Shown piece after piece: positions 1-7,163 of a stretch of 64,000 nt of DNA. Within the stretch, counting starts at the first letter, position 1. The number at the start of each line of letters is the position of its first letter. A program made the position numbers and the translations under genes. This DNA comes from Guillardia theta CCMP2712 (taxonomy: Eukaryota; Protista; Cryptophyta), in assembly GCF_000315625.1 (NCBI RefSeq), contig NW_005434616.1, positions 62,001 to 126,000 on the forward strand, in the 5' to 3' direction. The notes beneath the pieces are model-generated. The model made no database searches. It was not told the origin of the DNA and saw only the letters and a list, made by a program, of their open reading frames with translations.

Positions 1-1633
1 AACCTCCGCAGATTCCAGTTCCTGCACCTCTTGTAGCAGGAGACCTGTGGGATGATGAATACATACGGAATATGAGATCTGTCAACAAGAACGTGAGATA
101 TCTCTCCATCACTTTCAAACGTTTTGTTATGATTCGCTGCTAGGTATCAGAGCTCGTTTCAGGGGGATATGGAGTTCTGGAGTGGGTGGAGATGAAACGG
201 GTATGAACATTCATGATGTGAATCTCCGAGACTGACATGCCGGTTTGCATCAGAGCATCACCCCCAACCTTGTTGGAAGAGTCGCTGAGCAGGCATAGAA
301 TTGTGAATGGCAAGGAAGTGGAATTTGATGATATTGCCTCCAGCTTGCGGCCCTTCACTTGAACTCCTTGGAGAAATCAAGAAATCATGGATATCACATG
401 GACACCTTCCTTGGGCAGCGTAGACAGAGAAACAGCGAAATGAAGGTTTCTGAGGCATGGAGCAATTTCACTTTGACTCATGTGAGCTTAGGACTTCCTT
501 GAGTTTTTTGCGGAAAAAAGATTGGAACCAGAAATCCGTGATGCATCAGCAGCGAAAGAAAGAGTGGATCGGTCTCCCTCCAAGTCTGAAATCTTTGGAA
601 TTGACTTGCTCTCAGCTCTGCCGAGTACAGTGACAATATCCGAGATAAGATTGGATTCTTTGGAAACAAGGTCAGTAAGATAAATTTCATCTAATCATCT
701 TTAAGTGTTCGAAAAAGATACTGGAGCGATTAGTCGATAGCCATGTGTGGAGAGAAATCTTTGCGCCAGTGCTTGAATCAAGTCCTTCGATGTTGCACGG
801 AGACATCTGGTTGGGAAATATTGCTGTAAGAAGTCAATCAGCTCAGAGAGCCACTAGATTCTCACACTTCGTTGCAGGAAAAAGGCGACAAGACAGAATT
901 TGTTTTCGGACCTGCCAGTTGGCATGGGCCAGCTGAGTTCGATCTTGTACGCGGATCGTAATTTTCTACTTGTGATTGATCTCTCCGCAGTCGGTAGGGG
1001 AAACTTTTGGAATGCCTCAAAGGTTCTTCGAAGGTTACCATCACTATAACCCAAGGCTGGAAGGGTACTCCCTTGCTCTTGCGAAAGTTTGGCAGCAAGT
1101 TGATTTTTACTTTTCAATTAGGTACGAGATGAGGATGAAAGTGTACAAGCTTTATCACCTCTTGAACCATCTCAATCAGCCCTCGGATTACAAGTACAAC
1201 TTCAACATCGCGCGTGAGCCACTGTAAGTGACCGCACAATCGAAGTTTGCTAGAGCAAGAGTAATGCCTCATAGGTTCGAATATCGGCCCGACAATCTCC
1301 TAGGAGGAAGGACCTTGACAAACTTCAACAGTCAAGGGGTATCGCATCAACTCTACTGCAAGTGTCGGTCGGGTCACCTTACTCTTGCAGGTTCTGAATC
1401 CTGGGAAACATCAATACCGGTCAGAGATGGAGATGATCACTCGTGGAGGGTGGTTCGACCCAGAGGTCGCCTTGCTCCTTTGACATCTGACATGCTCTGA
1501 ACTTTAGCTGCAGTTTTATCTCAAAGAAGTTATGGGCCTCATCTATGAGATTCGCGACGTCCACCCCCCGCAGCAACAAGGGCAGATCTTCAAATTTTGG
1601 GGCAAAGCCAAGAAGCCCTCGAGGGGGTTTTGA
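1..1633 (+). CDS. Fructosamine-3-kinase / ketosamine kinase family protein (5' partial, multi-exon)
   Basis: Exon motifs IPVPAPLVAG, GYGVLEWVEM, LAALHLN, PSMLHGDIWLGNI, EFDL, MPQRFFEGYH and RMKVYKLYHLLNHLN match the FN3K family (HGDLWxGN; YHxLNHxN). The spliced C-terminus ends at TGA 1631-1633. Confidence 0.85.
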
Positions 1634-5747: not shown

Positions 5748-7163
5748 TCACATCTTGGTAATCTTGTCGATTGTGGTCTCGCGTGTTCTGCCATCGGAAA
5801 ACTGCGCGATCGTCAAAGAAAGCATGATGAGCAGACCCTACCAGGTTGCTTCACCTGGATATGATAGTAAGTCTTGGTCCTCATAGAACCATTGTGGCCT
5901 GGAAGCTCCACATCGACAACAACAACTTCTTCAGGATCTGAGCGAGGAGTTTGTTTGTAAAGAACTTTCTGCCCGATAGAAAGCTCGCCGACTCCTGCTC
6001 CCTATTGATGTCGTGGTCAACCATGGCACACAATCATGATGTTGTACTTGAACGGCCTGAACTTTCACGCCATCTCCAATCCTCTTGTCTTGGAAGTCCG
6101 TCTTGCGGAAGGGGGAGGAAGTCTCTGCAGGAGGGACATTTTCATCTTGAACATTCATCCTCTCCATCCCTTCCTCAGGAGCTTCCTCTGCAAAACTTCA
6201 GAGCAACATAACAGCAGAGGAAGGCACACCTTCTTGAACGAGTCGCAGCTTGTCCACCGTGGTATTTCGTTCCCTTCCATCTTCAAATCGGATCTTGTAG
6301 TTGTCTTTCCTGCGACCATTTTTGAGCTACACCTCAGACAGGTTCAGGAATCACCTGCTTCCAACAGGCTCGATCTCAACAATCTGGGCAACACTCTCGG
6401 CATTGCTTCCCAACTGTCTGTAGATGACAGTGCTTCCGACTTGCATCACGTTGGACACCACCTTAGCAGATGGCATACTCTGCTACACAAGACTCTCAGG
6501 CTCCAAGATGTCATCCTTACGATGTGTGAAACCTTGTGCACGTGCTCAGCAGGCTGGGGGGGAGCCTTTCCTTCGGGTTCAGCCCAGGCAAATGAAGTCC
6601 CTAAGGCATTGGAACCTCCAGCAGGAGCGTGCCTGACGACAGGAGTCACCCTAAAAGGGACTGAGCTTGTACTCACAGTCGAACACAGGAATGTCCAGTG
6701 TCACCAAATCCCTGGACAACTTTCAGGCTGAAGCTTTCATCTTTAAGATCTTATCAACCTTCCTGTCCTCCCCTGGGGACTCGGTGGGTTGAGGGCTTGC
6801 AGCTTGTACAGCCTTGGGAGGAGTAGCAATGCTCTTCGGAGGCGACATGGCAACACGTGGTGGCTGACAACAGATATCAGGAGAGACATTCCCCCGATGG
6901 ATCGAGCTCCTCTCACCTCATTTTCCTGGCCCCATCCAAAGGAAATGGAAGATGCACCGCCGGGAGGTGCGTGCAGACCTGCCCAAGATTACGTCAGCAC
7001 AGGAAAGTGATGCTAGCCTGCCTGCTAGCCATCGAGAATTTCATACGTGTACTGGATCGGCCCGAGGAGTGATCGTGAATCAGGTGCGCCTGAGCAGCGC
7101 AAAATGAGTCGAAATTTCGAATCGACGCAGATTCGTTACTTGATTGATGCTGTAGCCGCTCAT
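5748..7163 (-). CDS. Protein with two SPIRAL1/Jupiter-like PGG motifs and two SH3/Tudor-like repeats (multi-exon)
   Basis: Manual GT-AG splicing gives MSGYSINQAHLIHDHSSGRSSTRLHAPPGGASSISFGW...GHSCVRLHAPAGGSNALGTSFAW...MQVGSTVIYRQ...YKIRFEDGRERNTTVDKLR...LSIGQKVLYKQ...YHIQFSDGRTRETTIDKITKM*. Confidence 0.75.

What the first reader, a model, noticed from the sequence alone, without database searches (positions are those of the whole stretch)
5748..7163. Hidden spliced gene: two SPIRAL1/Jupiter-like microtubule motifs fused to tandem SH3/Tudor-like barrels
Seen: removing canonical short introns gives GRSSTRLHAPPGGASSISFG and GHSCVRLHAPAGGSNALG. In both motifs an intron falls just before the HAP, which suggests an internal duplication. 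Two ~55-aa beta-rich repeats follow (G-x-x-V-x-Y...Y-x-I-x-F-x-DGR-x-R-x-TT-x-DK). Known: plant SPIRAL1 (RxSTKVHAAPGGGSSL) and animal Jupiter/HN1 (PPGG) are microtubule-associated and are normally small and disordered. Inference: a modular microtubule adaptor with an architecture I do not recognise. The ORF track does not show it intact.
Basis: partly seen in the sequence, partly recalled or inferred. Interest (0 to 1): 0.75.

Follow-up and report, generated by a model that had tools for sequence, protein, structure and literature searches.

The report
Jupiter-like motifs fused to Tudor barrels
This is a real, transcribed 11-exon gene of the alga Guillardia theta, already in databases as a 'hypothetical protein', that joins two short microtubule-protein-type motifs (as in animal Jupiter/HN1 and plant SPIRAL1) to two Tudor-like beta-barrels; this combination seems confined to cryptophyte algae and its function has not been tested.

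Summary
On the minus strand, 11 exons (7163..5748) joined by 10 GT-AG introns of 42-68 nt encode 305 aa. This is identical to the annotated Guillardia theta protein GUITHDRAFT_141827 (XP_005828540.1) and to an MMETSP transcript, so the gene is not hidden. Both motifs read exactly as reported. The N-terminal half (1-133) is predicted disordered. It is clearly homologous to a family of ~120-aa two-motif cryptophyte proteins, one of which UniRef names 'Jupiter', and more distantly to ciliate-type PGGKS-repeat proteins. It does not reach Pfam's JUPITER model, and plant SPR1 could not be tested by profile. The two barrels are true duplicates (hhalign 98.4%, E 9e-15) and fold confidently (pLDDT ~90). 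Their best matches are Tudor domains (ERCC6L2 Z 9.0, LBR, PHF19, 53BP1; Foldseek tandem-Tudor hits at E 1e-4). They just pass Pfam DUF7141 (28.9 vs 27 bits). The introns in the two motifs are not at the same position, and a barrel-less paralog has no intron in either motif, so intron position does not support the duplication argument. Microtubule binding and an adaptor role are inferred only. It is a new variant of known kinds, of moderate interest.

The parts
5748..7163 (-). Whole coding region of GUITHDRAFT_141827 (305 aa). Exons: E1 7163-7140, E2 7089-7047, E3 6978-6917, E4 6863-6759, E5 6711-6677, E6 6632-6533, E7 6482-6355, E8 6309-6230, E9 6187-6048, E10 6001-5855, E11 5801-5748.
   Evidence: exon model identical to P0013; NCBI, UniRef and MMETSP records.
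6932..7062 (-). PGG motif 1, residues 18-38 (GRSSTRLHAPPGGASSISFGW). It is interrupted by intron 2 (7046-6979, phase 1, inside the Arg codon).
   Evidence: 77% identity over 43 aa to the N-terminus of Hemiselmis 'Jupiter' P0084, E 2e-18. JPT2's minimal microtubule-binding peptide LNPPGGKSSISFY is quoted in PMC12773733.
6584..6711 (-). PGG motif 2, residues 79-106 (GFGDTGHSCVRLHAPAGGSNALGTSFAW). It is interrupted by intron 5 (6676-6633, phase 2, inside the Leu codon).
   Evidence: It aligns to the motif of P0084 at E 1e-09. The GFGDTG...H.APGG unit is conserved across the family.
6231..6452 (-). Tudor-like barrel 1, residues ~134-192, split by intron 7 (6354-6310).
   Evidence: AF2 pLDDT ~90 with five strands. 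VIA-align: ERCC6L2 Tudor Z 9.0 / rmsd 2.0 / 58 aligned; LBR Tudor Z 8.7; PHF19 Z 8.7. DUF7141 hit at residues 153-188.
6063..6095 (-). Third short linear motif in the inter-barrel linker, residues 224-234 (DFQDKRIGDGV). It matches the [DE]F.[DE].RIG.GV element of the small barrel-less relatives.
   Evidence: It is present in the Guillardia fusion protein, the small family and the second architecture, but absent from the Geminigera-type orthologs P0016 and P0033.
5751..5986 (-). Tudor-like barrel 2, residues ~245-305, split by intron 10 (5854-5802). The stop codon is at 5750-5748.
   Evidence: AF2 pLDDT ~90. 53BP1 second Tudor Z 8.2 / rmsd 1.4 / 54 aligned. hhalign vs barrel 1: 98.4%. The orthologs' C-termini support the E10-E11 splice.

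Best explanation
Shown: window 7163..5748 (minus strand) is the single-copy Guillardia theta gene GUITHDRAFT_141827. It is transcribed and spliced into a 305-aa protein. Residues 1-133 form a disordered half that carries two copies of the [ST]S.[KR][VL]H.(A/P)PGG.S..(F)GW motif. Two duplicated five-stranded Tudor-like barrels (DUF7141-type) follow, separated by a ~55-aa disordered linker that holds a third conserved motif (DF.D.RIG.GV). Also shown: the motif half is homologous to a family of ~120-aa barrel-less two-motif proteins in cryptophytes, including a paralog on contig C32. That family links to small PGGKS-repeat proteins of ciliates and other protists. The same motif type is the mapped microtubule-binding element of human JPT2. 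Inferred: the gene arose when a small Jupiter/HN1/SPR1-type microtubule-associated protein was fused to a pair of Tudor-like barrels. The PGG motifs would tether the protein to microtubules (lattice, lumen/taxane pocket or plus end, by analogy with JPT2 and SPR1). The two barrels, held on flexible linkers, would bind a partner protein, a modified residue or a nucleic acid, making the protein a microtubule-anchored adaptor. The ligand of the barrels is unknown. From the sequence pattern, only about two of the usual four aromatic-cage positions are aromatic, so classical methyl-lysine or methyl-arginine reading is doubtful.
For: Gene model and transcripts. Single copy. Disorder and barrels: AF2 (residues 1-133 pLDDT <50; barrels ~90). 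Tudor fold: Foldseek top hits SHH1 SAWADEE, 53BP1, Sgf29, UHRF1, SETDB1, E 1e-4 to 2e-3, prob 1.00. VIA-align, run independently of Foldseek: ERCC6L2, LBR and PHF19 Tudor, Z 8.7-9.0, covering the whole target domains. Pfam: DUF7141 28.9 bits vs cut-off 27, hit in 14 of 16 family members, with Tudor_2 and Tudor_3 sub-threshold on the same strands. Barrel duplication. Motif-half homology to small proteins: (P0084, UniRef name 'Microtubule-associated protein Jupiter', profile E 7e-23; BLAST to P0013 2e-18). Wider PGGKS-repeat proteins at E 1e-10 to 1e-4 against 5.8 billion sequences. Literature: the PPGGK*S motif is needed for JPT2 microtubule localisation, and the 13-aa peptide LNPPGGKSSISFY localises to microtubules and is displaced by taxanes (PMC12773733). 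SPR1's GGG/PGGG repeats act in plus-end tracking (10.1101/521047), and the SPR1 repeat consensus is GG(G/H)(Q/-)SSL.YLFG (PMC9959322). Motifs and barrels stay together in two different orders (motif-motif-barrel-barrel, and motif-barrel-motif(s)-barrel), which argues for a functional link between the two modules.
Against: There is no experimental or computed evidence of microtubule binding for this protein or any cryptophyte relative. Pfam JUPITER does not hit P0013, gives only 11.9 bits (cut-off 27) for a barrel-less relative, and found nothing in the genome. The UniRef name 'Jupiter' is automatic. The resemblance to SPR1 and JPT rests on a motif of ~15-20 residues, which could in principle be convergent. 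The window motifs have A or S where JPT2's functional repeats have K (PPGGA, PAGGS vs PPGGK). Z scores of 8-9 for a 55-aa barrel are in the range the tool itself calls middling, and KOW, chromo, PWWP, CAP-Gly and SH3-like barrels also appear at Z 7-8. Tudor domains are mostly chromatin or RNP readers, and HN1/JPT proteins are also nuclear.
Confidence: 0.5

Rival explanations
1. It is a nuclear or RNP reader. The two Tudor-like barrels would be the functional core, binding methylated histones or other proteins, or nucleic acid. The disordered PGG-motif half would serve another purpose (nuclear role, phase separation, regulation) with no stable microtubule binding.
For: All the best structural matches are chromatin or RNP Tudor domains. 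The only other DUF7141-like barrel in this genome sits in a SNF2 helicase. HN1/JPT proteins are reported as partly nuclear, and Drosophila Jupiter gave strong nuclear signal in HeLa cells (PMC12773733; PMC12063521 abstract).
Against: The motif half is the more strongly and widely conserved part. On its own it forms a small-protein family of Jupiter/HN1 format. The aromatic cage looks incomplete from the sequence pattern (inference). No nuclear localisation signal or chromatin domain was found by Pfam.
Confidence: 0.25
2. It is a microtubule-associated protein in which the barrels do not recruit a third party. Instead they would bind tubulin or microtubules themselves, or self-associate, adding avidity, bundling or cross-linking to the PGG motifs.
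For: The barrels sit on long flexible linkers and occur in variable order with the motifs, as expected for multivalent lattice binders. Small barrels such as CAP-Gly bind tubulin, and CYLD CAP-Gly appears at Z 7.0-7.2.
Against: There is no CAP-Gly signature or Pfam hit. The barrels are near neutral (pI 6.5-7.0), so they are not obvious binders of acidic tubulin tails. CAP-Gly ranks below many Tudor hits.
Confidence: 0.15
3. It is an artefact: a chance chain of short ORFs with GT-AG boundaries, or a mis-annotated pseudogene.
For: None beyond the fact that no single long ORF covers the region.
Against: The exon model is identical to an independently assembled transcript product and to the NCBI model. 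Orthologs at 45-54% identity with the same architecture exist in other cryptophytes. The barrels fold with high confidence.
Confidence: 0.01

Closest known systems
Animal Jupiter / HN1 (JPT1, JPT2) microtubule-associated proteins
   Same: Both have repeated PPGG-type motifs in a disordered chain. Window motif 1 (LHAPPGGASSISFGW) nearly matches JPT2's minimal microtubule-binding peptide LNPPGGKSSISFY. The barrel-less cryptophyte paralogs share the small size and the motif at the extreme C-terminus (…HAPGGKSSGNILSWS, …HAPGGKSNFVLG).
   Different: The window protein is 305 aa with two folded barrels. Its motifs have A or S instead of the Lys of PPGGK*S. Pfam JUPITER (PF17054) is not reached.
Plant SPIRAL1 / SP1L plus-end tracking proteins
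   Same: Both have a direct repeat of a G-G-x-S-S…(Y/S)(L/F)(F/G)(G/W) unit preceded by GGG or PGGG, set in a disordered, poorly conserved spacer. Relative P0007 starts MAGRSCGGGASSMGTSFGW, like SPR1's N-terminal GGG repeat.
   Different: SPR1 proteins are ~12 kDa with the repeats at the two termini and no folded domain. No SPR1 profile or sequence was available here, so homology is not tested. SPR1 is regarded as plant-specific.
Small two-motif proteins of cryptophytes (G. theta C32 paralog; Hemiselmis P0084; Rhodomonas P0072; Baffinella P0092) and ciliate-type PGGKS-repeat proteins (some reach Pfam DUF4057)
   Same: Homology to the window protein's N-terminal half is demonstrable (BLAST 2e-18; profile hits). 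The NAHLIHDHSSGRSSTRLHAPPGG start, the GFGDTG…H.APGG second unit and the RIG motif are shared.
   Different: They have no barrels and are 90-170 aa long. In the C32 paralog the motifs are not interrupted by introns. P0013 itself does not hit DUF4057.
Tudor / 'Royal family' barrels (ERCC6L2, LBR, PHF19/MTF2, 53BP1, SHH1 SAWADEE) and Pfam DUF7141
   Same: The five-stranded barrel has the Y…Y.I.F.DG strand pattern. The best structural matches by two independent aligners are Tudor domains, and DUF7141 is just passed.
   Different: The two barrels are separated by a ~55-aa disordered linker (more than 200 aa in the second architecture), not packed as in 53BP1, UHRF1 or SHH1 tandem Tudors; Foldseek rmsd is 16-20 Å over both barrels. 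By sequence pattern only about two cage positions are aromatic, and Arg sits where 53BP1 has Tyr (from memory of 53BP1; not computed here). No Tudor Pfam model reaches its cut-off.

Membership tests
JUPITER / HN1 (Pfam PF17054) | Sequence reaches the curated Pfam model (27 bits) | tested here: not met
   No hit for P0013 or any of 16 family members at E<=0.1. No six-frame hit in the genome, although that search rang nowhere, including the controls. The best result is 11.9 bits for barrel-less relative P0049.
JUPITER / HN1 (Pfam PF17054) | Repeated PPGG(K)xS motif, the mapped microtubule-binding element | tested here: met
   Two copies at residues 18-38 and 79-106. Compared with the JPT2 peptide quoted in PMC12773733. 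The Lys after GG is absent in the window protein but present in the small paralogs.
JUPITER / HN1 (Pfam PF17054) | Small, wholly disordered protein that binds microtubules | tested here: not met
   305 aa with two confidently folded barrels. Microtubule binding itself cannot be tested with these tools.
SPIRAL1 / SP1L | ~100-130-aa protein with the GG(G/H)(Q/-)SSL.YLFG repeat at both termini | tested here: not met
   The motif type is similar, but the protein is 305 aa, both motifs lie in the N-terminal third, and the C-terminus is a barrel.
SPIRAL1 / SP1L | Profile-level sequence homology to plant SPR1 | not tested
   No SPR1 sequence or profile could be obtained by reference. The word search with the small-family profile returned no named SPR1 among the 120 hits listed out of 266.
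DUF7141 (Pfam PF23614) | Whole-protein score at or above the gathering cut-off (27 bits) | tested here: met
   P0013 scores 28.9 bits, E 9.7e-07, and 14 of 16 relatives hit. This is borderline: the match covers profile positions 3-34 of 61, and single exons or truncated isoforms fall below the cut-off.
Tudor / Royal-family barrel | Five-stranded Tudor barrel fold | tested here: met
   AF2 barrels at pLDDT ~90. Foldseek tandem-Tudor, SAWADEE and Agenet hits, E 1e-4, prob 1.00. VIA-align Z 9.0/8.7/8.7 to ERCC6L2, LBR and PHF19 Tudors at rmsd 2.0-2.5 Å over 56-62 residues. Caveat: other small barrels score Z 7-8.
Tudor / Royal-family barrel | Curated Tudor sequence models (Tudor_2, Tudor_3, Tudor_5) | tested here: not met
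   The best scores are 16 bits against cut-offs of 25.8-31.4.
Tudor / Royal-family barrel | Aromatic cage of 4-5 residues for methyl-Lys or methyl-Arg | tested here: inconclusive
   Family alignments show invariant Tyr at the end of strand 1 and invariant Phe in F.DGR, with Arg at the following position. Model coordinates could not be inspected, so cage geometry is not established.

The most novel reading that the evidence does not exclude
The protein is a microtubule-resident 'reader'. The PGG motifs would anchor it on or inside microtubules, and the two Tudor-like barrels would recognise a post-translational mark on tubulin or on a microtubule-bound partner. That would make it a dedicated tubulin-code reader built from a chromatin-reader fold, invented in cryptophytes.
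Probability: 0.1. Interest if true: 0.8.

Novelty: new variant of a known kind. Interest (0 to 1): 0.42.

Why it matters
Jupiter/HN1- and SPIRAL1-type proteins are known as tiny, fully disordered microtubule-associated proteins, and they are usually treated as animal and plant inventions respectively. This locus adds three points. First, the same PGG motif unit is widespread in protists: cryptophytes, ciliate-type sequences and many environmental eukaryotes. That bears on whether SPR1 and Jupiter/HN1 are one ancient family. Second, in cryptophytes the motif module has been fused, in two different orders, to a pair of Tudor-like barrels. Tudor domains are not known as parts of microtubule-associated proteins, so if the fusion does sit on microtubules it offers a natural handle for finding what such a barrel binds there. 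Third, it gives the uncharacterised Pfam family DUF7141 a fold assignment (Tudor-like) and a second protein context. It remains a bioinformatic prediction for an annotated hypothetical protein in an organism that is hard to manipulate genetically, hence the moderate score.

Tried and rejected
- **Single-exon scans.** Pfam gave only a weak DUF7141/Tudor_3 hit on E8. PDB sequence searches with E10 and E7 gave nothing meaningful.
- **E7 vs E10 by BLAST.** No alignment was found. The duplication only became significant with family profiles.
- **Pfam JUPITER.** It found nothing in the genome, and nothing in the control genomes either, so this is uninformative. It was sub-threshold on relatives.
- **PDB sequence searches with profiles.** The family profile A3, the small-family profile A4 and P0093 gave no significant hits. 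There was only a chance-level match to a ribosomal-L2 SH3-like design at E 0.46. No solved microtubule structure contains a chain with this motif.
- **The look-up of encoding contigs for P0001 and P0004.** Nothing is on record.
- **Protein atlas.** Only sub-0.9 leads came back: small oomycete and ciliate proteins, a Jupiter cluster at 0.81, and Tudor clusters at TM ~0.3.
- **Literature.** No paper mentions DUF7141, DUF4057 appears only in gene lists, and nothing links Tudor domains to Jupiter/SPR1-type proteins.
- **Bacterial promoter/terminator scan.** At background level and irrelevant for a eukaryote.
- **Basic barrel surface binding acidic tubulin tails.** Considered and dropped: the barrels have pI 6.5-7.0.
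- **Alternative splice choices.** The gtaagg donor at 6520, the 26-nt intron ending at 6651 and the acceptor at 6327 were considered and rejected because P0013 and the transcript use the sites in the model.
- **Hand-joined spliced protein.** I never typed or submitted one. All whole-protein steps used database protein P0013, returned by a tool and then shown to equal the exon model.

Full report
**What is there**

The window is eukaryotic, and the stretch 5748-7163 has no long ORF. Reading the minus strand and checking it exon by exon with a script gives 11 exons joined by 10 GT..AG introns of 42-68 nt. The frame is continuous from ATG 7163 to TGA 5750-5748, and four codons are split by introns. 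GRSSTRLHAPPGGASSISFG spans exons 2 and 3, and GHSCVRLHAPAGGSNALG spans exons 5 and 6.

**How the whole protein was handled**

I searched single exons by reference. The family scans left the barrels open, so I spent the one representative search on exon 10 (49 aa). It returned 11 proteins, among them isoforms of this very gene. A cluster look-up identified the organism and the gene:

- The organism is Guillardia theta CCMP2712.
- The gene is GUITHDRAFT_141827 (EKX41560.1 / XP_005828540.1, UniRef L1J0E0), 305 aa, here P0013.
- The same product comes from MMETSP Transcript_23791.

A script showed that every exon peptide of my model lies in P0013 in order, with exactly one residue between exons wherever a codon is split, from residue 1 to 305. 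From then on P0013 was used by id.

The gene is therefore real and transcribed, and already annotated as 'hypothetical'. It is not hidden. Other MMETSP isoforms retain intron 8 (P0012), intron 9 (P0015) or intron 10 (P0001). That confirms these stretches are introns, seen in both spliced and unspliced form. Six-frame searches of the 87-Mb assembly found the barrel exons only once, apart from a 69-nt fragment described below.

**The motif half**

AlphaFold2, run with a 16-sequence family alignment, predicts residues 1-133 as disordered, with pLDDT below 50. This half is homologous to a separate family of small proteins:

- A six-frame search with exon 6 found a paralog on contig C32. Read on the minus strand, it encodes a ~121-aa protein (…AHLIHDHSSGRSSTRLHAPPGGGNAMGTSFGWGDDSAP / APIKK…KGEFVDNRIGCGVENK…KGFGDTGASSVKVHHAPGGKSSGNILSWS-stop) with two motifs, no barrel, and no intron inside either motif.
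- Its relatives are 90-145-aa proteins of Rhodomonas, Hemiselmis, Baffinella and many environmental eukaryotes.
- One of them, Hemiselmis P0084, carries the automatic UniRef name 'Microtubule-associated protein Jupiter'. It is 77% identical to the first 43 residues of the window protein (E 2e-18), and the window's second motif aligns to it at E 1e-09.
- The small-family profile also reaches many 80-170-aa proteins built from repeated TSVKVHHAPGGKSNFSLGW units and ending …VHNPPGGKSNFTLG. These hits have E 1e-10 to 1e-4 against 5.8 billion sequences. Named sources include Stylonychia and a Sphagnum assembly entry. Two of these proteins pass Pfam DUF4057.

**Comparison of the motif with known families**

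- **JPT2.** The PNAS 2025 paper (PMC12773733) maps microtubule localisation to PPGGK*S repeats. It shows that the 13-residue C-terminal peptide LNPPGGKSSISFY is enough to localise to microtubules and is displaced by taxane-site ligands. Window motif 1 reads LHAPPGGASSISFGW.
- **SPR1.** Its direct repeat is GG(G/H)(Q/-)SSL.YLFG, preceded by GGG or PGGG (PMC9959322). Its GGG repeat is required for plus-end tracking (bioRxiv 10.1101/521047).

The motif type therefore matches. Formal membership does not hold. Pfam JUPITER does not reach P0013 and gives only 11.9 bits for a relative. No SPR1 profile was available to test.

**The intron argument**

This does not hold. Intron 2 splits the Arg codon (phase 1) and intron 5 splits the following Leu codon (phase 2), so they lie 4 nt apart relative to the motif. 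The C32 paralog has neither intron. The duplication is supported by sequence similarity instead.

**The barrels**

AF2 gives two five-stranded barrels, at about residues 138-190 and 248-305, with pLDDT ~90. They are separated by a ~55-aa low-confidence linker.

- **Duplication.** Family profiles of barrel 1 and barrel 2 align with hhalign probability 98.4%, E 9e-15, over 56 columns.
- **Foldseek against the PDB.** The top hits are tandem Tudor, SAWADEE and Agenet modules (SHH1, 53BP1, Sgf29, BAHCC1, SETDB1, UHRF1, FMRP) at E 1e-4 to 2e-3. The rmsd of 16-20 Å over both barrels shows that their mutual orientation is not that of a packed tandem Tudor.
- **VIA-align, run without Foldseek.** For barrel 1 the best matches are ERCC6L2 Tudor (Z 9.0, rmsd 2.0 Å, 58 of 58 residues), LBR Tudor (Z 8.7) and PHF19 Tudor (Z 8.7). 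For barrel 2 the best match is the second 53BP1 Tudor (Z 8.2, rmsd 1.4 Å). KOW, chromo, PWWP, CAP-Gly and designed SH3-like barrels follow at Z 7-8.
- **Pfam.** On full-length P0013, DUF7141 scores 28.9 bits (cut-off 27), and 14 of 16 relatives hit it. Tudor_2 and Tudor_3 are sub-threshold on the same strands.

My conclusion is that these are Tudor-like barrels of the DUF7141 type. 'SH3-like' is true only in the broad sense of a small barrel.

From the alignments, the invariant residues are a Tyr at the end of strand 1 and the Phe and Asp of F.DGR, with Arg where 53BP1 (from memory) has a cage Tyr. A full aromatic cage is therefore doubtful, but I could not inspect coordinates. The barrels are near neutral, pI 6.5-7.0.

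**Distribution and architecture**

The word search with P0013 and sequence inspection show two architectures:

- **Motif-motif-barrel-barrel:** Guillardia; Geminigera P0016 (335 aa); and P0033, which EukProt labels Siedleckia nematoides but which is closest to the Geminigera-type sequences and may be carry-over in that transcriptome (inference).
- **Motif-barrel-motif(s)-barrel:** P0007, P0023 and P0042, all from unnamed environmental sources.

Hanusia has a fragment. All reliably named sources are cryptophytes. The two modules stay together while their order changes, which argues that they work together.

A third short element, [DE]F.[DE].RIG.GV, lies in the linker before barrel 2 (DFQDKRIGDGV, residues 224-234). 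It recurs in the small family and in the second architecture, but not in the Geminigera-type orthologs.

**Mechanism**

Shown: the gene, its splicing, the disordered two-motif half and its homologs, the duplicated Tudor-like barrels, and their co-occurrence with the motifs.

Inferred: the gene is a cryptophyte fusion of a small Jupiter/HN1/SPR1-type microtubule-associated protein with two Tudor-like barrels. The PGG motifs would tether it to microtubules. The barrels, on flexible linkers, would bind a partner, a mark or a nucleic acid. I give the architecture about 0.95, microtubule association about 0.5, and an adaptor or reader role about 0.3. The statement as a whole gets 0.5.

Rivals are a nuclear or RNP Tudor reader whose PGG half does not bind microtubules (0.25), a multivalent microtubule binder whose barrels bind tubulin or self-associate (0.15), and an artefact (0.01, refuted by transcripts and orthologs).

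**Novelty**

The locus is an annotated hypothetical protein. No paper in the searchable library mentions DUF7141 or links Tudor domains with Jupiter/SPR1-type proteins. It is best classed as a new variant of known kinds, namely a fusion of two known module types. Interest is moderate. It would rise if the barrels proved to read a mark on microtubules.

Noticed in passing
L005 (G000:C32:521692-524751), minus strand 1602..1214: A barrel-less paralog of ~121 aa. It has the same NAHLIHDHSSGRSSTRLHAPPGG start, an EFVDNRIGCGV element and a C-terminal GFGDTGASSVKVHHAPGGKSSGNILSWS. One 47-nt intron separates the two halves, and there is no intron inside either motif. It belongs to a cryptophyte family of 90-145-aa proteins, one of which UniRef names 'Jupiter'.
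   Followed up: yes
L007 (G000:C41:504459-507518), 1499-1567: A 69-nt copy, 97% identical, of window 6243-6310 (most of exon 8 plus the last base of the acceptor). It is flanked by runs of N in a gap-ridden stretch. It is either a stray duplicated fragment or an assembly artefact.
   Followed up: partly
L002 (G000:C48:89933-93010), + strand, long open frame around 1501-1578: A SNF2-type helicase (…DEPGMGKT…, …ILDEGH…) with a Tudor-like barrel upstream of the helicase core. It gives the only other DUF7141-like hit in the genome (22 bits). The layout recalls ERCC6L2, whose Tudor domain was the best structural match to barrel 1.
   Followed up: partly
window 6229-6188, 6047-6002, 5854-5802 (introns 8, 9, 10): MMETSP transcript isoforms retain each of these introns (P0012, P0015, P0001) and end in premature stops. 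The UniRef entry A0A6U5Z1R8 (301 aa) is the form that retains intron 10 and so lacks the last strands of barrel 2.
   Followed up: yes
window 6036-6731, + strand: The longest mechanical ORF in the region (231 aa) lies antisense to exons 6-9. It has no support and is taken as spurious.
   Followed up: partly
proteins P0049 / P0056 (environmental, ENA): Barrel-less proteins of 376-394 aa with an HN1-like N-terminal unit (SSRVLQRPGGTSTINLFGG) and three long repeats, each ending GRSSTRLHAPPGGASQISFG. This is another way the same motif has been multiplied.
   Followed up: no
protein P0033 (EukProt label Siedleckia nematoides): A full-length ortholog with the cryptophyte architecture, filed under an apicomplexan transcriptome. 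It is probably cryptophyte carry-over and should not be read as evidence that the family extends beyond cryptophytes.
   Followed up: no
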